The position numbers and the translations under genes were made by a program. From positions 147,169 through 211,168 of the IMG/VR virus record IMGVR_UViG_3300023181_000025: a stretch of DNA of 64,000 bases. The stretch is one strand, 5' to 3'. Within the stretch, counting starts at the first letter, position 1. The number at the start of each line of letters is the position of its first letter. Positions 9,887 through 49,875 of the stretch are shown piece after piece. The notes under the pieces are model-generated. The model was given only the letters and a program-made list of their open reading frames with translations, was not told the DNA's origin and made no database searches.

Positions 9887-10041
9887 TTTATTATGAAAAA
9901 TATTTTTAAAATTATTGGAATTATTTTTATATCTCCTTTTATGGTTATCCATTTTATCGCGTGGTATTCATTCAATTCATTTCTTGGGGGAACATTAAAC
10001 TATAAAAAATGGGGGCACGCTCCATTAAATCTTCCTTAATT

Positions 10042-11202
10042 ATGAATAATCTAACGCAATACCCCGAGCCGCCGAACCCTGACGCCGTGATACTCGGGCC
10101 GGGAGGGAGCTTCAAAGTGCCGGAGAGCTTAGCAGGCTTTCAAGGATGGGCATTTTATGAAGACGGAAGAGGCTGGGATGGGCCATATTGGCAACACGGA
10201 GAGTGCCCCCGAGCCATCTACGCCGCACGCCGCGATTCGGACGTGGTGAGGCTGAATATTCCTGATCACCTCGACATTGACGGCGATCCTCCGGACCATC
10301 GGACGTATAGGCACGAGGAAGCAGAAGATTTACCGCCGGAAAAAACATCGCCCGTAGCAAAGAGCGGCCTGCCGCCATACTTTCAGGAAGATGTCACGGT
10401 TGAGGAGCACGAGGCCGACTTGGGGGCGTTTTTAAATGCCATGGAGAAGCAGCACCCGAAAGACGTTTTTCGTGAGTGCGACAAGTGCGAGTCTTTAGGT
10501 GCTCAACTCGTCTGTGGAGACACCGGGCAGTGCTGCGCGGAGAACGGCGAACGGAAATTCCTGCATCTGGCTGCACAAGGATTGAAGCCGCTTACCGACG
10601 AGGAAGTTCAAAGGTGGGCTGACACGGCATTCACCAAGTTTACCACCCCACCCCTTGCCGGTTCAGGGAAGGGGGAGGCGGGGACTCCGAGAGGAATGAG
10701 GGAGTGTCACCGCACGTTCATGGAAATGTTCCCATGGCTGGACAAACAATTCTCCAGCTACGACGAGTGGATAGTTTCCGACGACGACCACGCACGATCA
10801 TTCCGCCAAGGATGGGCGGCCAACACCAGGGCTCTCGCCTCAGCGCGGGCGGAGATCGAGGACATTAGAACCTTCGCGCAGAAATTACAGGATGATGTTC
10901 GTTCACTTTGCGGAACGCCGGTCGGAGTCTCGACCCGAGACGGCATTTCCTTGCTCAAGGCAGAGATCGAGAGGCTGAGGGGTGCGCCAGTCACAATCGA
11001 CGGTAGGAACTTTAAGACGCCGCTTGAGGCCTCCCTGCATCTGCTTTGGCTGCTGCAACGCCTGAGCTATTACGAGCCGCACCGCGAAGGAATGCCCGCA
11101 GACGGCCCACGATTCCGCCAAGGGATCATTGAGTCCCGCAAACTCCTTTCCACCATTGGATACATGAAGGAAGCCACCAACGCGGGAGGCTCCGGTGAGT
11201 GA
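10042..11202 (+). CDS. Mosaic hypothetical protein on a GC-rich island
   Basis: Visibly higher GC than flanks; N-terminal domain resembles repeats of ORF 33244. Confidence 0.7.
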   Translation: MNNLTQYPEPPNPDAVILGPGGSFKVPESLAGFQGWAFYEDGRGWDGPYWQHGECPRAIYAARRDSDVVRLNIPDHLDIDGDPPDHRTYRHEEAEDLPPEKTSPVAKSGLPPYFQEDVTVEEHEADLGAFLNAMEKQHPKDVFRECDKCESLGAQLVCGDTGQCCAENGERKFLHLAAQGLKPLTDEEVQRWADTAFTKFTTPPLAGSGKGEAGTPRGMRECHRTFMEMFPWLDKQFSSYDEWIVSDDDHARSFRQGWAANTRALASARAEIEDIRTFAQKLQDDVRSLCGTPVGVSTRDGISLLKAEIERLRGAPVTIDGRNFKTPLEASLHLLWLLQRLSYYEPHREGMPADGPRFRQGIIESRKLLSTIGYMKEATNAGGSGE

Positions 11203-11617
11203 GCTTCTGCCATGCCCGTTTTGCGGAAACAGTGCTATAATTAGAAAATATGATGGTGAATGGTATATCCGCTGTTACGGAAATGGAAGTTGTCATGCTA
11301 ATCCGTTTTACGCAGATCCAGACCGAGAAATAGTTTGTAAACGCTGGAACACCCGCGCCCCGTCAGCCGGTGAAGCAGAGGTTAGGGGAGAGCTAAAGCG
11401 AATCAAAGTCCACTTTGCCGAAGATATGGTTGACAAACGAGAGGAAATGCGCGCATTACGTTCGATAGCTGATAAACTTGAAGAGGCGGGAACATTTCTT
11501 CGTCAAGATTTAGAATTAGAATTAATTGATAGAAGACAAATTAATACCTCTAAATGGTGCTCCCTAGTAAATTGGAACGAAGTTTTGGCCGAATACGCTG
11601 TGTTTAAAAACGAGTAA
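11195..11617 (+). CDS. Lar-family restriction alleviation zinc-finger protein with coiled-coil tail
   Basis: ELLPCPFCG...YIRC...C...WNTRA. Confidence 0.75.
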   Translation: MSELLPCPFCGNSAIIRKYDGEWYIRCYGNGSCHANPFYADPDREIVCKRWNTRAPSAGEAEVRGELKRIKVHFAEDMVDKREEMRALRSIADKLEEAGTFLRQDLELELIDRRQINTSKWCSLVNWNEVLAEYAVFKNE

Positions 11618-11627
11618 CTACAAATAT

Positions 11628-11993
11628 ATGAAAACTAAAAAAGAAATACTTGAATACGTAATCAGTGAAATTTGCGCACAGGGGCGGGCAACAAATGGAA
11701 GTCATTGCTGTCTCGAAACGAATGACGGAAAGCGTTGCGCATTTAGTTTATGTATAACTGATGATAGTCGAAAGGCTTTAATTTTATCTAATTATAGCGG
11801 GGCCGTAAGCGGCCTAAGCGATTGGGAGATTGAACAATATCTTAAACCAGAGTTTCACGGTCACGAGAGGGAATTTTGGGAAAACCTTCAAGTTCTTCAT
11901 GACGTAGCAACGAATTGGGAAAATTATAGCGGCCCAACACTATTATCCTCTGAAGGGGTAAAACAATATAAAAAAATTCTTAATAACGAATAA
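11628..11993 (+). CDS. Paralog family A member
   Basis: G..CAF..C; FW..LQ.LHD...NW. Confidence 0.8.
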   Translation: MKTKKEILEYVISEICAQGRATNGSHCCLETNDGKRCAFSLCITDDSRKALILSNYSGAVSGLSDWEIEQYLKPEFHGHEREFWENLQVLHDVATNWENYSGPTLLSSEGVKQYKKILNNE

Positions 11994-11997
11994 AATT

Positions 11998-12474
11998 ATG
12001 AATAGATCTCTATTTTATAAGGCGTGGCACGAGGCCGATAGCCAGAAAAACATTAAATTTCAAAACATTTTAATCGACCGGCAAACTTTTAATGTAATTA
12101 ATTTAATTTCAAGGCGGCCATCCAGAAGTTGGGCAGGTATTAAGAGGGAGGCAAAGAAATTTGGTTTTAAGCCGTCCACTTACGGGTATGCTTTAATTGG
12201 CAAAAATTTTGTAGTCAAAACCTCTGGCTTTTGCGGCAAAAAACCCAAAAAGGCTTGTCCCACTTATGAAATTAAAAATACCGGCTGGATATTACAACCT
12301 AAACTGGATTTACTTGCTGACGATTTTAAAGAGAGTCATTGGGAGGTATTGGTAAAAAATGGATGGGCAAAAAAAGAAGTTAATTATACATATAATATTC
12401 CCGGTTTTGGAGAGGACGCCCATGAGCAAAATTGGGGAATTTTAAACGGAGAATTCGTTCAGCATGATTGGTAA
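11998..12474 (+). CDS. Minimal kinase-like protein
   Basis: FVVK, ILQ, DAHEQNWG...HDW resemble kinase beta3 Lys, catalytic loop and DFG equivalent. Confidence 0.5.
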   Translation: MNRSLFYKAWHEADSQKNIKFQNILIDRQTFNVINLISRRPSRSWAGIKREAKKFGFKPSTYGYALIGKNFVVKTSGFCGKKPKKACPTYEIKNTGWILQPKLDLLADDFKESHWEVLVKNGWAKKEVNYTYNIPGFGEDAHEQNWGILNGEFVQHDW

Positions 12475-20192: not shown

Positions 20193-20342
20193 ATGAGCCT
20201 ACACACAATTAAACTTCGTTCAAATTATTGGCTTGCCCGGCTTTTTAAGCTTGCAGGGCTATGTTATAAATGCAAGATTACGTCATTGAACTTCACGCGA
20301 CATGGACAAGGGGTTTGCCCAAAGTGCGGGAAACGAGTTTGA
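20193..20342 (+). CDS. Small zinc-ribbon protein (49 aa)
   Basis: CYKC...CPKCG; not in ORF track. Confidence 0.6.
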   Translation: MSLHTIKLRSNYWLARLFKLAGLCYKCKITSLNFTRHGQGVCPKCGKRV

Positions 20343-20353
20343 ACATTATTTAT

Positions 20354-20887
20354 ATGAAATTTGCAGATATTCCAAAATTTCCACATTCTTTTTATAGAAT
20401 TAATGTAGATCTAGACCATGTAGAACGCGCACTGGAGCACTGGGATGAACCTGCATCGGGGAGCCCATTAATCCTTAATCCTGAATGGCAACGGGGCCAC
20501 GTCTGGACAAAAAAGCAACAAACTTCATATATGGAATATATGCTTAAGGGCGGGAACACGGGAAAAGAAATTTATTTTAATTGTTCTTCTTGGGGTGGAG
20601 GTTTCAATACTCCTATTTATTGCGTTGATGGTCTTCAGCGTCTAAGTGCGGCCCTTGCCTTTATCCGTAACGAGATTCCCGCTTTTGGGTTTTTGTGTAA
20701 AGATTACGAAGACAGGCTCAGAATGTCTGGCGTGGGGTTCTTTTTCAACATGCTTCAAGTTAAAAGCAAGAAAGAACTTCTCAATATTTATATTGATTTT
20801 AATAGCGGCGGCACACCTCACAAACCAAAAGAAATTGCCCGCATTATCGAATTGCAAAAAAATACAGATCCATCCGAAACAGTATGA
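20354..20887 (+). CDS. DUF262 (ParB/GmrS-like) domain protein
   Basis: LNPEWQRGHVW, VDGLQRL, F..FNSGG. Confidence 0.85.
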   Translation: MKFADIPKFPHSFYRINVDLDHVERALEHWDEPASGSPLILNPEWQRGHVWTKKQQTSYMEYMLKGGNTGKEIYFNCSSWGGGFNTPIYCVDGLQRLSAALAFIRNEIPAFGFLCKDYEDRLRMSGVGFFFNMLQVKSKKELLNIYIDFNSGGTPHKPKEIARIIELQKNTDPSETV

Positions 20888-24499: not shown

Positions 24500-24573
24500 G
24501 GGGCGATAGCTTAACCGGTGAAAGCAGCGGTTTCATAAACCGTTGAGTGAGGGTTCGACCCCCTCTCGCCCTA
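24500..24573 (+). tRNA. tRNA with CAT anticodon, probably tRNA-Ile2 (lysidine-modified); elongator Met not excluded
   Basis: Cloverleaf GGGGCGA/TCGCCCT, GCGGT-TTCATAA-ACCGT, GAGGG-TTCGACC-CCCTC; no initiator features; tilS nearby; CCA not encoded. Confidence 0.92.
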
Positions 24574-24574
24574 C

Positions 24575-29765: not shown

Positions 29766-30289
29766 TCCATAGTTGATCCATGAAGGAATTTAATCTCGCC
29801 CAACTTAGATATGCTGAGGAAGTATGTTTTAAGGACGATTTCATTAAGCTATTCAACAAATACGCTTTGAATTCGTTAGAAGAGAACTTGGGACTATATC
29901 ACTGGTATTATATTTGCAGCGATTATCAAGGCAAAGTATTGAATTGGATTTTCCACTGGTCCCGCGCTGACATGAAAAATGCGATGGGTGGGATCATCGA
30001 AGGAATGCTCACCGATCTAATTGGAGATTACAAAGGATAAAATGAAAAGTTTAATCTTAGGGTTTATTTTGGGGTTCATGATGGTTTTTGGCGTGTGGTG
30101 GCTCAAAACTCCGAATCCCCCATTGGTTTGCTTTCTTCTGGCGGTAGCCTCTATCATTTACCCTCTCAAGGTAAAGATAGATGAGTTAAGCACCAAAATT
30201 TATGAATTCGACAAAGATTGCGGCGGAATTCTTGTAGATTTCCTGAAATGTGTTGAGGGTAAAAAGGATGTTGACAATCGGAAGAAATA
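29746..30289 (+). repeat. 19-bp direct repeat TTGACAATCGGAAGAAATA (29746-29764 and 30271-30289) flanking a two-gene cassette
   Basis: Exact match; both copies are promoter -35/spacer and encode C-terminal DNRK. Confidence 0.9.
29780..30040 (+). CDS. Hypothetical protein
   Basis: Leaderless after promoter at 29746. Confidence 0.65.
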   Translation: MKEFNLAQLRYAEEVCFKDDFIKLFNKYALNSLEENLGLYHWYYICSDYQGKVLNWIFHWSRADMKNAMGGIIEGMLTDLIGDYKG

Positions 30290-40899: not shown

Positions 40900-40981
40900 G
40901 GTCCGTTGCCCAAATTGGTAAAGGGAACATCTTTAAACGGTGTCGCGTAACAGCTTCTCGGTTCGAGTCCGAGGCGGACTA
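40900..40981 (+). tRNA. tRNA-Leu(TAA)
   Basis: GGTCCGT/GCGGACT acceptor, ACATC-TTTAAAC-GGTGT, long variable arm, CTCGG-TTCGAGT-CCGAG; CCA not encoded. Confidence 0.92.
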
Positions 40982-41596
40982 CTTATTTTTACCTTTGTTT
41001 TTGCCGCAATAAGTTTCCGTAAGGGAATGGCAATTAGGACAAAGAAATCGAAGGTTTGACAGTTCATTGTTGGAGTTGTCCCCATCTATATGGTCCAAGT
41101 GAAGAGAGAGTTTAATTCCTCGCCATTCTGTAAGGAAACACTCATCACATATATAAGGAATAAGACCGTATTTAAGAATTTTTCGTTTTAGATTTGTGCT
41201 ATGGAGAGTTCCATCTTTAACAAAAGATTCCTCTATAGATTTTTCTGGTGCATATATATTTGTCTTATTTTTTAAATGCCCCTGACCAGTAAAATGGGAG
41301 GTGTCCAAGCACAGTGATTTTATTCTATTATAAAAAATTCTATAATTGCCTCCCCTAGGAACAATGTCACATTTCTTTAAAACCTCGGCGACTGAAAAAC
41401 TTTCAGCAACATATTGAGAAAATAATTCATTATCAACTTTTGCCGTTGAATGTTTGGATTTAATTTTATCCTTGCTGGTCTTTCCTTTGCACCAGTCCAT
41501 AACAGTTGAGCGATTTACCCCTGTTTGTCTGGATATTTCACAGTAATTTAAACCCTTTTCCCTTAATTTTAATACATTTTCAAATAATTCATTCAT
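40979..41596 (-). CDS. HTH + HNH endonuclease
   Basis: GLNY.EISR.TGVNRSTV..W; C..C...W....L.LHLDHIDG...NN...NLR.LCPNCHS.T. Confidence 0.92.
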   Translation of the reverse strand: MNELFENVLKLREKGLNYCEISRQTGVNRSTVMDWCKGKTSKDKIKSKHSTAKVDNELFSQYVAESFSVAEVLKKCDIVPRGGNYRIFYNRIKSLCLDTSHFTGQGHLKNKTNIYAPEKSIEESFVKDGTLHSTNLKRKILKYGLIPYICDECFLTEWRGIKLSLHLDHIDGDNSNNELSNLRFLCPNCHSLTETYCGKNKGKNK

Positions 41597-47112: not shown

Positions 47113-47496
47113 ATGAAAACATACGCAGAAATACAGGGCGAGCCACCCTTTAATTGGTTTAATTTTTTGAGCCAAGAAAACATTTCATCCGAGGAATGGC
47201 AAGACGCTAAGATTAAATCAAGTTCATGGGTTACCTGCGCTTGTGGCAACCAATGCAGTATTATCCCTCGCTCAATTTACGGCGCGCCTCTTGATAATGA
47301 GCTAGAGGCATTAGGAGGGGGTCAAGGCTTTCATGGGGCAATCGAATTGAAGCTTAAAGGGGTGGCGCTGGAATACCTTAAACTTATTGAAAAAAGGTCC
47401 GCCTATTTGATCAAAAATATAAACGAAGAGATTGAAAGGGAGATTATGGATCATGAAGAAGAAATTAAAAGGCTCAAAAAACTACTTATTTCTTGA
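47113..47496 (+). CDS. Hypothetical phage protein
   Basis: WVTCACG....IPR...G.P.D..L..LG. Confidence 0.75.
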   Translation: MKTYAEIQGEPPFNWFNFLSQENISSEEWQDAKIKSSSWVTCACGNQCSIIPRSIYGAPLDNELEALGGGQGFHGAIELKLKGVALEYLKLIEKRSAYLIKNINEEIEREIMDHEEEIKRLKKLLIS

Positions 47497-47527
47497 TATT
47501 TGCGAAAAATAAGTGTATAACGAAGGC

Positions 47528-47749
47528 ATGAAGGTCTTCTTATTTATGTCTTTTGTAGCAATTTGGCCTGTTTCTTGTCATGATAAGAACAAAAACCATT
47601 GCCCCGCGCCACCTCAAAAGCAGGTTTGCGAGCCTAAACCGCATTGCTATACTCAAATGCCCCTGATCGCGCCTGAGCCGTCCTTAGCTATGGGAAGCGC
47701 CTTTACATGCACGGTAATGCTAGGGGTTCTACGCAGGCGAAAGCCATAA
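47528..47749 (+). CDS. Miniature PEP-CTERM protein (73 aa)
   Basis: N-terminal signal (PVSC); C-terminal APEPS, hydrophobic helix, RRRK; own promoter TTGATA-N17-TATAAC. Confidence 0.75.
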   Translation: MKVFLFMSFVAIWPVSCHDKNKNHCPAPPQKQVCEPKPHCYTQMPLIAPEPSLAMGSAFTCTVMLGVLRRRKP

Positions 47750-47790
47750 AATTAGGTTGACAAATTTAATAAACGGTCCATTCTTTTCGC

Positions 47791-48090
47791 ATGACTCGTC
47801 ACAAAAAGCTCATTGAGCAAATAACCTCTCTTGAAAGTTCAATTTCTCAAACTCCGGTGAAGGCAAAGAACGCACGGAAATTTGAGTTAGATTCTAATTT
47901 TGCTTTCCAGTGCGGCGAAATGTCAAGGGTTATAGATAAAATGCTTCCTATCGTAAATGAGTATGCTAATTTTGTTGGACATGGGGAAATTTATTTAAAA
48001 TGCGTTAATGCTTTGGAAACTTACCGGGATTTTCAGGAAAACAGATTAGCTTTTGTATCTGGGAAAGATTTCCCCGGAATTGAAGGTTAA
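47791..48090 (+). CDS. Hypothetical protein
   Basis: Leaderless after promoter at 47757. Confidence 0.65.
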   Translation: MTRHKKLIEQITSLESSISQTPVKAKNARKFELDSNFAFQCGEMSRVIDKMLPIVNEYANFVGHGEIYLKCVNALETYRDFQENRLAFVSGKDFPGIEG

Positions 48091-48344: not shown

Positions 48345-48680
48345 ATGGACATTAAAACCCTTGAAGAATTGATTCAAATTTTGGATCAAAATAAAATTAA
48401 ATATTATGGGGAAACCTCCGAAACGGTCATTTACCCCGCCATGAAAAAAGAATACAAAGGATATATTAGGATTCATTTTAGTCCAGAAAATCCTCTTCCC
48501 GATGTTTGGGAAAGCATTCTTATTTCAAATATTAAAGGAATCGAGGTCTCTGTTTCTGGAACTCGTATTGTGAGCGGAAACGGTGCAATTGATGGTATGC
48601 TATTGCCGGAATATGCCATGCGGCGAGAAAGCCTTAACGAAAAGAGGAAATCGCTTGGATTCCAGCCTATTGGATATTGA
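48345..48680 (+). CDS. Hypothetical protein
   Basis: Tiling. Confidence 0.6.
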   Translation: MDIKTLEELIQILDQNKIKYYGETSETVIYPAMKKEYKGYIRIHFSPENPLPDVWESILISNIKGIEVSVSGTRIVSGNGAIDGMLLPEYAMRRESLNEKRKSLGFQPIGY

Positions 48681-48712
48681 CTTTTCCAGCAAGCCTTTGT
48701 ATTGTCGTTTAT

Positions 48713-49609
48713 ATGGATAAGATTTATAAAATTTGCTCAACAGAGGAATATGATTTGTTGGTGGAGAAGTTTGGGAAAGAGTATTGGAAGACCTCCAAAA
48801 GAGGTTGTCTTTCCGCTCTTGGGATGCATTCAGAAATTGCTATTTTCCCTCGCTCTATTTCTTTGTCGGGGAATTATTCTTCTAATCCTGAAGCGACTAA
48901 AAAACACAAACCTTGCCTAGAAATTGTTTCTTTTGATGAGGCGATGGCGGAAAATTTTAATATAAATACTGGGGATAAGTTTGAAGCTGTGAGGGATGAG
49001 CCTTTTTGTATTAGTCGTCTTAAAAAGGGTGGACCAATTACAGTTACGAAAATTTTGGAAACGGGCGGGTTTCTTGGAAAAATTCCCGGAGACATTTTTG
49101 ATTATATTTTTAGGAACGATCCGCGCCAAATTAAAAAAATCAAATCAAAAACATCCATGACCCTCCGCGAGCAAATCGAATTGGCAAAAAGCTACTTAGG
49201 AAAAACAATTGAATACTCTGAAGGGATATCCAATACAGTTTCGGGGATTGTATTGGGAACAGATACGAATGCTCAAGTTGGGGGCGCTTATACCGACAGA
49301 GCGGAAAAACAAATCGCTAAAAATGGCTTTTTTGTTTCAATTTGGTTGAAAGAAAGTAAAGGATTTATTTTGATTGATGATCAGACCCCTAATTTTAAAA
49401 TTCATGAGCCTATCATGGTGAACGGTTTTGAAGCCAAAGATCGCGGGGATTCTTATGGTTTTGGGTGCGCGAAGATTGGAAAGGAGTCCTTGAAAGCGGC
49501 GAAAACCTTTTTGGAAACAGTCAAATCAGACGGAACTAATAAGCCGGTCGAGTTTGTAGAGATTGGCGCGGGTAAATTTACTTTGGAAATTCTTAATAAG
49601 CTCGTTTGA
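48713..49609 (+). CDS. Multidomain paralog family D member
   Basis: EQIELAKSYLGK; VNGFEA...FGCAKI...V.IG.GKF. Confidence 0.75.
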   Translation: MDKIYKICSTEEYDLLVEKFGKEYWKTSKRGCLSALGMHSEIAIFPRSISLSGNYSSNPEATKKHKPCLEIVSFDEAMAENFNINTGDKFEAVRDEPFCISRLKKGGPITVTKILETGGFLGKIPGDIFDYIFRNDPRQIKKIKSKTSMTLREQIELAKSYLGKTIEYSEGISNTVSGIVLGTDTNAQVGGAYTDRAEKQIAKNGFFVSIWLKESKGFILIDDQTPNFKIHEPIMVNGFEAKDRGDSYGFGCAKIGKESLKAAKTFLETVKSDGTNKPVEFVEIGAGKFTLEILNKLV

Positions 49610-49637
49610 AAAATAATTATTGACAGTCCTTCAATTA

Positions 49638-49875
49638 ATGAAAAGTTTAATCTTAGGATTTATTTTGGGGTTCATGATGGTTTTTGGCGTATGGTGGCTT
49701 GAGACTCCAAATCCCCCATTAGTTTGCTTTCTTTTGGCGGTAGCCTCTATCATTTACCCTCTCAAGGTAAAGATAGATGAGTTAAGCACCAAAATTTATG
49801 AATTCGACAAAGATTGCGGCGGAATTCTTGTAGATTTCCTGAAATGTGTTGAGGGTAAAAAGGATGTTGACAATC
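49638..49875 (+). repeat. 238-bp dispersed repeat (other copy 30042-30279)
   Basis: 8 mismatches by hand count, all in the first ~100 bp; ends in TTGACAATC. Confidence 0.95.

What the first reader, a model, noticed from the sequence alone, without database searches (positions are those of the whole stretch)
47528..47749. Phage-encoded miniature PEP-CTERM protein
Seen: a 73-aa ORF with a signal peptide or lipobox, a ~30-aa Cys/Pro linker and the tail APEPSLAMGSAFTCTVMLGVLRRRKP. Known: PEP plus TM helix plus Arg cluster is the exosortase sorting signal, abundant in Verrucomicrobiota, Planctomycetota, Cyanobacteria and some Proteobacteria, and linked to EPS/surface layers. Inference: with almost no cargo domain and its own early promoter, it may be an exosortase decoy or a surface-remodelling or superinfection-exclusion factor. 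It also constrains the host.
Basis: partly seen in the sequence, partly recalled or inferred. Interest (0 to 1): 0.7.

Follow-up and report, generated by a model that had tools for sequence, protein, structure and literature searches.

The report
Phage mini-protein mimicking exosortase sorting signal
A 211-kb phage from leaf litter carries a 73-residue orphan gene that is little more than an export signal, a short Cys/Pro-rich linker and a C-terminal sorting tail copied from a sugar-binding surface protein family that some Verrucomicrobiales bacteria process with a dedicated exosortase; the phage may use it to occupy or exploit that host pathway, but expression and function are untested.

Summary
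The ORF exists as described (window 47528-47749, +). A PEP + hydrophobic helix + Arg-cluster C-terminus occurs about 0.01 times per simulated phage genome. The real genome has two, both with signal-like N-termini. The general PEP-CTERM models (PF07589, TIGR02595) do not hit the ORF. They also miss its true relatives: the tails of ~280-aa DUF4114 (lectin-like) proteins in a few Verrucomicrobiales genomes. Those genes lie next to a divergent, unnamed exosortase paralogue. A profile built from five such tails, collected through their N-terminal domain, scores the ORF 28.6 bits (E 9e-8 against 1835 phage ORFs). Ordinary PEP-CTERM tails from the same genomes reach at most 16.9 bits. Only the tail is homologous. 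The rest of the ORF has no relative among 1.84 billion representative proteins, IMG/VR, GenBank phages or JGI metagenomes. Codon usage and GC3 are host-like rather than phage-like, which suggests recent capture. The phage also carries a full-size choice-of-anchor-A PEP-CTERM gene shared with related phage contigs. Best reading: an exported minimal substrate or competitor for a dedicated host exosortase (inferred). Main rival: a recently captured, possibly inert gene fragment. The promoter, "early" timing and lipobox are not supported. The host is constrained to family level only.

The parts
47528..47749 (+). 73-aa ORF including the stop codon (alternative GTG start at 47513 gives 78 aa)
   Evidence: It fills a 294-nt interval that would otherwise be among the longest 3% of intergenic gaps.
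47528..47578 (+). Signal-like N-terminus M1-C17: MK, an 11-13 residue hydrophobic core, then P-V-S-C. Signal peptidase I cleavage after V-S-C or lipoprotein processing at C17 are both possible.
   Evidence: Heuristic n/h-region test passed. No SignalP-type tool was available. GC3 is 0.35, phage-like. Pro at -3 departs from the lipobox consensus quoted in PMC6139136.
47579..47668 (+). 30-residue Cys/Pro/Lys/His-rich linker H18-I47 (Cys25, Cys34, Cys40); the only 'cargo'
   Evidence: Sequence. No homologue found. GC3 0.53.
47669..47746 (+). Variant PEP-CTERM sorting tail A48-P73: PEP codons 47672-47680, hydrophobic span L53-L68 at 47684-47731, RRRK at 47732-47743
   Evidence: Profile of 5 host DUF4114-protein tails: 28.6 bits, E 8.9e-8 against 1835 phage ORFs. 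The 7-tail profile gives 40.4 bits. BLASTP to the G124 protein: 15/24 identical, E 5e-9. The same 10-mer APEPSLAMGS occurs in metagenome locus L094.
47493..47521 (+). Possible sigma-70-like promoter TTGATA-17 nt-TATAAC, ending 6 nt before the ATG (weak, unverified)
   Evidence: Read. Not listed by the scanner. Promoter-like sites are frequent in this AT-rich DNA.

Best explanation
The ORF is a phage gene for a Sec-exported mini-protein with three parts. A signal peptide takes it across the inner membrane. A roughly 30-residue Cys/Pro-rich peptide is exposed in the periplasm. The C-terminal tail holds the protein in the inner membrane and presents a PEP motif. The tail is not a generic PEP-CTERM. 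It is the particular flavour ([G/A]-A-P-E-P-[S/T]-L-x-x-G, 15-16 hydrophobic residues, RRR) carried by DUF4114 lectin-like surface proteins. Those proteins are encoded beside a divergent exosortase paralogue, a TPR protein and an EpsI-like protein in a small subset of Verrucomicrobiales. Shown: the tail homology, its specificity, the linkage of host tail and exosortase paralogue, and the absence of any cargo domain. Inferred: the host's dedicated exosortase recognises and cleaves the mini-protein. With no cargo, the mini-protein would act as a minimal substrate. It would either compete with the resident lectin for processing and so change what the infected cell displays (for example receptor or matrix-lectin loss, superinfection exclusion, easier release), or be delivered itself to the surface. 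Host-like GC3 in the linker and tail suggests that this part was captured fairly recently from host-like DNA.
For: Tail specificity: (28.6 bits, E 8.9e-8; next phage ORF 5.6 bits; 34 ordinary PEP-CTERM proteins of the same genomes at most 16.9 bits). Pairwise and profile matches. More tails of the same flavour on full-size DUF4114 proteins in metagenomes. Chance exclusion. Linkage of the tail family to an exosortase paralogue: about 2 kb apart in G124, G140, G195, G048, G155, G214 and G113; 12 kb in G266; a contig break in G116. All 9 of the 301 sampled genomes with the paralogue also have the DUF4114-PEP gene. Tail flavour covaries with the exosortase subclade: APEP[ST]L tails go with paralogues 42-53% identical to G124's, ANPEP tails with 34-37%. 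The phage uses this host pathway elsewhere: its 262-aa choice-of-anchor-A protein (TIGR04215 2e-22) has a PEP-CTERM tail (18 bits), and its homologues all carry tails. Feature-based look-alikes are small (82-95 aa) bacterial PEP-CTERM proteins, a lead only at score 0.84. Gene spacing. The same sequence stands in contigs of a second sample.
Against: No hit to PF07589 or TIGR02595. No full-length homologue anywhere, so no evidence of purifying selection. Not found in the available fragments of related phages. Codon log-likelihood is -0.017 per codon against 0.179 +/- 0.065 for real genes, within the range of spurious ORFs. Synonymous codon usage is not phage-adapted. No RNA data. The host is unknown, and no sampled genome combines the DUF4114/exosortase cassette with the choice-of-anchor-A homologue. 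Exosortase chemistry and acceptor are themselves not established.
Confidence: 0.45

Rival explanations
1. Inert remnant. The phage recently picked up the 3' end of a host gene with this tail. It happens to be open and in frame with an upstream start and a hydrophobic stretch, but it is not expressed or has no function.
For: Orphan status and no conservation in relatives. GC 48% against 38% for the genome. GC3 is 0.53-0.54 in the linker and tail against the phage mean of 0.34 (binomial p 0.0016), close to host DUF4114 genes at 0.59-0.63. The GC-rich block ends at the stop codon. The neighbouring genes are orphans in a fluid accessory region.
Against: A signal-like N-terminus is found in only 2-4% of spurious ORFs. 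The ORF fits the tight gene spacing. All conserved tail positions are intact. The family profile stops 3 residues before PEP, so no trace of DUF4114 is retained. There is no nucleotide similarity to the closest host tails (39/81), so the capture is not very recent relative to the sampled hosts.
Confidence: 0.25
2. A small bitopic envelope protein whose PEP is incidental. It would have an N-terminal (lipo)protein signal plus a C-terminal membrane anchor, acting as a unimolecular-spanin-like lysis protein or as a receptor-blocking or superinfection-exclusion protein, independent of exosortase.
For: The topology (Cys after the signal, Pro-rich periplasmic segment, C-terminal helix with a basic end) resembles u-spanins and o-spanins as described in PMC6139136. 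Unusual lipoboxes are documented there.
Against: The tail matches one host sorting-signal family over 24-26 residues, not just 'helix plus Arg'. None of 58 u-spanins has a periplasmic Cys (PMC6139136); this protein has three. The periplasmic part is only about 35 residues. No endolysin was found with PF00959, PF01464 or PF01510, and no lysis genes are recognisable nearby. A 225-aa phage protein with a canonical lipobox and a C-terminal helix (genome 7962-8639) is a better architectural u-spanin candidate.
Confidence: 0.1
3. A chance ORF or an assembly chimera with host DNA.
For: Short ORF with atypical composition.
Against: The tail motif is expected 0.01 times per genome and 0 of 100 times with a signal. 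Profile E-value 8.9e-8. Contigs from a second sample cover 47608-47951 and 47303-47514 without any difference.
Confidence: 0.03

Closest known systems
PEP-CTERM/exosortase sorting system (Haft et al. 2006, PMC1569441; PF07589, TIGR02595)
   Same: PEP motif, short hydrophobic helix and Arg cluster at the extreme C-terminus; N-terminal signal; a candidate host lineage rich in PEP-CTERM proteins and exosortases.
   Different: Scores below every reporting threshold of the general models. Encoded by a phage. Essentially no cargo.
Dedicated variant exosortase/variant-tail pairs (such as XrtC with VPDSG-CTERM and XrtD with VPLPA-CTERM in NCBIfam); here an unnamed pair: DUF4114 protein tail plus a divergent exosortase paralogue in Verrucomicrobiales
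   Same: The mini-protein carries this pair's tail flavour (28.6-40.4 bits). The host tail and enzyme are genetically linked and covary.
   Different: The mini-protein lacks the DUF4114 domain. It sits in a phage with no exosortase. The host enzyme reaches no named Xrt subtype cut-off.
Small bacterial PEP-CTERM proteins (Atlas clusters of 82-95 aa, PF07589 in 100% of members)
   Same: Size and architecture: signal, short linker, sorting tail (a lead only).
   Different: No sequence homology was shown. Those proteins are bacterial and their function is unknown.
Small phage envelope lipoproteins that block receptors or exclude superinfection (T5 Llp, TP-J34 Ltp; recalled from my own knowledge, not tested here) and u-spanins (PMC6139136)
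   Same: Small exported phage protein with Cys residues and a membrane anchor; a plausible role in changing the infected cell surface.
   Different: None of these has a sorting-enzyme recognition tail. The lipobox here is non-canonical. u-spanins lack periplasmic Cys.
The same phage's choice-of-anchor-A PEP-CTERM protein (genome 115412-116200; TIGR04215, PF20597)
   Same: Phage-encoded, signal peptide plus PEP-CTERM tail; homologues in Verrucomicrobiales chromosomes.
   Different: It has a 200-aa adhesin-like cargo, a generic tail flavour and phage-adapted codons, and it is conserved in at least four related phage contigs.

Membership tests
PEP-CTERM domain (PF07589 / TIGR02595) | Match to the family HMM at or above the curated cut-off (20.7 bits for PF07589) | tested here: not met
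   hmmscan gave 0 families at E<=10 in Pfam and NCBIfam. The six-frame PF07589 scan of the phage reports only the other gene. Bona fide host proteins with the same tail flavour also fail.
PEP-CTERM domain (PF07589 / TIGR02595) | [quoted passage not shown] | tested here: met
   Residues 49-51 are PEP, 53-68 are uncharged (mean Kyte-Doolittle about 1.7), and 69-72 are RRRK, one residue from the end.
PEP-CTERM domain (PF07589 / TIGR02595) | N-terminal signal peptide | tested here: inconclusive
   A heuristic n/h-region test is passed. No dedicated signal-peptide predictor was available. The cleavage type is undecided.
PEP-CTERM domain (PF07589 / TIGR02595) | Occurs in an organism with an exosortase (EpsH family) and several PEP-CTERM proteins | tested here: inconclusive
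   The phage has no exosortase and two PEP-type ORFs. Candidate host-lineage genomes have exosortases and 15-53 PEP-CTERM hits each. The actual host is unknown.
Variant tail of DUF4114 proteins paired with a divergent exosortase paralogue (unnamed) | Match to a profile of that tail family, better than ordinary PEP-CTERM tails | tested here: met
   28.6 bits, E 8.9e-8 (5 tails gathered by N-domain homology); 40.4 bits (7 tails). Ordinary tails score at most 16.9 bits.
Variant tail of DUF4114 proteins paired with a divergent exosortase paralogue (unnamed) | DUF4114 (PF13448) cargo domain | tested here: not met
   The full-length family profile aligns only to residues 50-77 of the 78-aa form. Pfam gave no hit.
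Variant tail of DUF4114 proteins paired with a divergent exosortase paralogue (unnamed) | Gene adjacent to the exosortase paralogue, TPR and EpsI-like genes | tested here: not met
   tblastn of the cassette proteins against the phage finds only the tail. The neighbours are orphans.
Unimolecular spanin | Lipobox at the N-terminus plus a C-terminal transmembrane domain | tested here: inconclusive
   A C-terminal helix is present. P-V-S-C deviates at -3 from [LVI][ASTVI][GAS]C, although deviant lipoboxes exist (PMC6139136).
Unimolecular spanin | Periplasmic domain without Cys, beta-rich, and located in a lysis cassette | tested here: not met
   Three periplasmic Cys and about 35 periplasmic residues. 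No endolysin or holin is recognisable nearby.
Bacterial lipoprotein | Lipobox [LVI][ASTVI][GAS]C after a signal h-region | tested here: not met
   Pro at -3. Three other phage ORFs have canonical-looking lipoboxes: TFSC, LSSC and MAGC.

The most novel reading that the evidence does not exclude
A virus encodes a cargo-less mimic of a C-terminal protein-sorting signal that is aimed at one dedicated host exosortase. During infection it jams or hijacks that enzyme, so that a lectin-like surface protein (possibly the phage receptor or a matrix anchor) is no longer displayed. This would be the first viral decoy substrate for a sortase-like sorting enzyme, and a natural probe for the still unknown exosortase reaction.
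Probability: 0.2. Interest if true: 0.8.

Novelty: new variant of a known kind. Interest (0 to 1): 0.55.

Why it matters
What exosortases cleave, and what they attach their substrates to, is still largely unknown. A 73-residue natural substrate with a roughly 30-residue mature part, matched to a single dedicated exosortase paralogue, would be a convenient handle for mass-spectrometric mapping of the cleavage and attachment product. If the phage uses it as a competitor, that would be a new way for viruses to remodel the host surface. The work also shows three further things. A clade of large low-GC phages carries PEP-CTERM surface proteins, which points to Verrucomicrobiales hosts. A tail variant and its exosortase paralogue are missed by the current general models. 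A negative general-HMM result would have wrongly dismissed the finding.

Tried and rejected
1. The exhaustive phmmer search gave one hit, P0017. It is a translated perfect tandem repeat whose weak 12/28 match is counted seven times, so it is an artefact.
2. L002/H3 (Yersinia phage, 17 residues of the signal region) and the other tblastn hits in GenBank phages have E of 2 or more and are spurious.
3. Complex prediction of the G124 exosortase paralogue with residues 18-73 gave 'no answer' (score 0.01, controls not run). This is no evidence either way.
4. A tblastn alignment appeared to extend from the tail into the DUF4114 core motif (F..IW....D.N). It adds no score, and the family profile does not support it.
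5. Searching related phages through neighbouring genes failed. The 310-aa neighbour has no homologue by word index or in IMG/VR. Logan contigs cannot be searched whole.
6. The choice-of-anchor-A gene was not found in IMG/VR or GenBank phages.
7. Rfam and folding of the start region gave nothing significant.
8. Shine-Dalgarno analysis is uninformative, because only 18 of 160 phage genes have one.
9. Reads from three leaf-litter samples show no variants in the ORF, so no selection test was possible. No RNA run was listed.
10. A 52-aa PF07589-positive frame in G124 is a frameshifted larger gene, not a host mini-protein.
11. Organism names for the G handles could not be obtained.

Full report
**Setting.** The window is bases 147169-211168 of a 211,168-bp virus record, rated complete by CheckV and 37.5% G+C. 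It is the JGI contig Ga0247815_10000014, and near-identical sequence stands in three leaf-litter metagenome runs. About 91% of the genome is coding, mostly on the + strand, with a median intergenic gap of 9 nt. The window holds phage auxiliary and replication genes (NAPRTase, Pif1-like helicase, RuvB-like ATPase, PP-loop ATPase, GmrSD_N). It also holds two tRNAs and many orphan small genes. The ten ORFs around the finding have no PHROG hit and no meaningful Pfam hit.

**The observation.** It has a signal-like N-terminus ending P-V-S-C17. A 30-residue linker follows, with Cys25, Cys34, Cys40 and seven Pro. The tail is A-P-E-P-S, 16 uncharged residues, R-R-R-K-P. I tested whether this could arise by chance. 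A regex for PEP + uncharged hydrophobic stretch + basic C-terminus hits only two open frames in the genome, both with signal-like N-termini. One hundred order-2 Markov genomes gave one tail and none with a signal. The second real hit is a 262-aa choice-of-anchor-A protein at genome 115412-116200 (TIGR04215 2e-22, PF20597 2.5e-26). Its tail scores 18 bits with PF07589 in the six-frame scan.

**General models fail, a specific one does not.** Pfam and NCBIfam give no hit for the 73-aa protein even at E<=10. A six-frame search of 301 genomes of the family that contains Akkermansiaceae bacterium UBA1315 found no full-length relative. Three of the six best partial hits were C-terminal tails of PEP-CTERM proteins, aligned in register. 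The two closest (G124, G116) belong to one orthologous group of ~280-aa proteins with a DUF4114 domain. I then collected orthologues through their N-terminal domain rather than through the query. Seven proteins in six genomes share a distinctive tail: [G/A]-A-P-E-P-[S/T]-L-x-x-G, 15-16 hydrophobic residues often with Cys, then RRR. A profile of the five tails not found via the mini-protein scores the ORF 28.6 bits, E 8.9e-8 against all 1835 phage ORFs. The next ORF scores 5.6 bits. Thirty-four ordinary PEP-CTERM proteins from the same genomes score at most 16.9 bits, mostly around 0-3. Four more full-size DUF4114 proteins with this tail turned up in JGI metagenomes. One of them shares the 10-mer APEPSLAMGS. 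None of ten such host proteins reaches the PF07589 cut-off, and the G124 protein scores 19.5 against 20.7. The negative general-HMM result therefore reflects a divergent tail variant, not the absence of a sorting signal.

**The host-side system.** In G124 the DUF4114-PEP gene lies in a co-directional cluster. The cluster contains a second DUF4114 protein, a 650-aa TPR protein, a 275-aa exosortase-family protein, a 270-aa unknown and an EpsI-like DUF3485 protein. The exosortase-family protein scores 63.7 bits with PF09721 and 41 bits with TIGR04178, and no named Xrt subtype comes near its cut-off. G124 also has a separate XrtA-like exosortase. The paralogue occurs in 9 of 301 sampled genomes, and all nine also have the DUF4114-PEP gene. 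The two genes are about 2 kb apart in seven genomes, 12 kb apart in one, and separated by a contig break in one. The tail flavour tracks the enzyme. APEP[ST]L tails go with paralogues 42-53% identical to G124's. A different flavour (ANPEPxFWxMMA) goes with paralogues 34-37% identical, and with homologues elsewhere in the phylum that score at most 3.4 bits with the tail profile. This is the signature of a dedicated enzyme and substrate pair. According to PMC9109919, DUF4114 is a Ca-dependent sugar-binding (PA-IIL-like lectin) domain.

**What is and is not homologous.** Only the tail is shared. The full-length family profile aligns to residues 50-77 of the 78-aa form and stops three residues before PEP. 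An apparent tblastn extension into the DUF4114 motif adds no score. At nucleotide level the tails are unrelated (39/81 identical). The signal and linker have no relative in any of the following:
- 5.8 billion clustered proteins searched by word index;
- 1.84 billion representatives searched exhaustively, where the single hit is a tandem-repeat artefact;
- IMG/VR;
- GenBank phages;
- JGI metagenomes searched by tail pattern.

**Is it a working gene?** Four points speak for it: the combination of signal and tail, intact conserved tail positions, a good fit to the phage's gene spacing, and the presence of the same sequence in a second sample. Several points speak against or are neutral. The codon log-likelihood is -0.017 per codon, against 0.179 +/- 0.065 for real 73-codon windows, and overlaps the range of spurious ORFs. 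Synonymous usage lies between phage-adapted and uniform. GC3 is 0.53-0.54 in the linker and tail against 0.34 for phage genes (p 0.0016), near host DUF4114 genes at 0.59-0.63. The 17-codon signal is phage-like at 0.35, but it is too short to weigh. I read this as relatively recent capture from host-like DNA. That fits both a young functional gene and an inert fragment. By contrast, the phage's choice-of-anchor-A gene is fully phage-adapted. It is also conserved at 49-56% identity in low-GC phage-like contigs (L057, L059/L060, L061, and the 34%-GC contig L007 filed under an actinobacterial MAG). Its bacterial homologues sit in conserved chromosomal context in Verrucomicrobiales. The available fragments of those related phages contain no mini-protein.

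**Promoter, timing and lipobox.** TTGATA-17-TATAAC (47493-47521) is visible, but the scanner does not list it and such sites are common here. Only 11% of phage genes have a Shine-Dalgarno motif, so its absence is uninformative. No RNA run was listed. 'Early' is unsupported. P-V-S-C fails the lipobox consensus at -3. Signal peptidase I cleavage after V-S-C is equally plausible from my reading.

**Mechanism.** I commit to the following. The protein is exported, anchored by its tail, and recognised by the DUF4114-type exosortase paralogue of the host. Because it has no cargo, its effect is on the pathway: as a competitor for the resident lectin, or as a short surface-delivered peptide. The steps shown are the tail homology and specificity, and the host enzyme-tail linkage. 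Recognition, cleavage and any phenotype are inferred. The complex prediction gave no verdict.

**Rivals.**
- Inert captured fragment: probability 0.25.
- Exosortase-independent bitopic envelope protein, such as a u-spanin-like or exclusion protein: 0.10. It is weakened by the specific tail match, by three periplasmic Cys where none of 58 u-spanins has any (PMC6139136), by the short periplasmic span, and by a better u-spanin-like candidate elsewhere in the phage.
- Chance ORF or assembly chimera: 0.03.

**Host.** Both phage PEP-type genes point to the GTDB family that contains Akkermansiaceae UBA1315 and Roseibacillus, and exosortases are present in every genome checked. However, the five tail-flavour genomes tested (of the six) lack a choice-of-anchor-A homologue, and UBA1315 lacks the DUF4114 cassette. 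The host is therefore an unsampled member of the family, or the two genes have different sources. Host loci are 48-62% G+C against 37.5% for the phage, which is a large gap.

**Novelty.** PEP-CTERM proteins, small ones included, and dedicated exosortase/tail pairs are known kinds. I found no report of a phage-borne, cargo-less copy of a dedicated pair's tail. The literature searches returned only a passing PEP-CTERM annotation in a Dehalococcoides virus-like element. I rate the finding a new variant of a known kind, of moderate interest, limited by being a single unexpressed-as-yet orphan.

Noticed in passing
L001:787-1575 (genome 115412-116200, outside the window): The phage encodes a 262-aa choice-of-anchor-A / ice-binding-like adhesin-domain protein with a signal peptide and a PEP-CTERM tail. 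Homologues at 49-56% identity lie in several low-GC phage-like contigs (L057, L059/L060, L061). Homologues at 46-58% lie in Verrucomicrobiales chromosomes between nuo genes and aspS/hisS. This points to a phage clade that carries an exosortase-sorted surface protein.
   Followed up: partly
L069 (G124:C110:5500-17500); also G140, G195, G048, G116, G266, G155, G214, G113: A host cassette of DUF4114 proteins, a TPR protein, a divergent exosortase paralogue and an EpsI-like protein. The paralogue reaches no named Xrt subtype cut-off in NCBIfam. The cognate tail variant is missed by PF07589 in 10 of 10 proteins. It looks like an undescribed dedicated exosortase subtype.
   Followed up: partly
window 30041-30279 and 49637-49875: A 239-nt direct repeat (97% identical) inside two paralogous genes for 86-89-aa proteins with two hydrophobic segments. 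It explains the apparent variants and loose ends at 49637-49875 when contigs were laid. The 310-aa neighbour (48677-49609) and two 177-aa ORFs also have paralogues in the phage.
   Followed up: partly
L097:2963-3640 (genome 7962-8639): A 225-aa phage protein with a canonical-looking lipobox (T-F-S-C) and a C-terminal hydrophobic helix, about 730 nt upstream of the PhoH-like gene (one ORF between them). Its architecture resembles a unimolecular spanin. It has no Pfam hit.
   Followed up: no
L001:484-750 (genome 115109-115375): An 88-aa lipoprotein-like ORF (M-A-G-C lipobox, Pro-rich start of the mature part) immediately upstream of the choice-of-anchor-A PEP-CTERM gene. It has no Pfam hit.
   Followed up: no
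L007 (JASLCW010000479.1, 8158 bp): A contig filed under a Marmoricola sp. MAG is 34% G+C and carries a choice-of-anchor-A PEP-CTERM gene 54% identical to the phage's. It is probably a mis-binned fragment of a related phage.
   Followed up: partly
whole phage genome: Only 18 of 160 long genes have a Shine-Dalgarno-like 4-mer at spacing 3-12. Upstream regions are A/T-rich with T at -1. This suggests SD-independent initiation.
   Followed up: partly
window 10001-12000: A local G+C peak (0.50 against about 0.38) over a 397-aa ORF (10009-11202) with no Pfam hit; possibly another foreign gene. G+C also rises to 0.43-0.47 at 60-64 kb.
   Followed up: no
window 24500-24574 and 40900-40982: tRNA-Met (CAT) and tRNA-Leu (TAA) genes.
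   Followed up: no
window 20270-20887: A 205-aa protein with a GmrSD_N (restriction endonuclease N-terminal) domain, in a phage.
   Followed up: no
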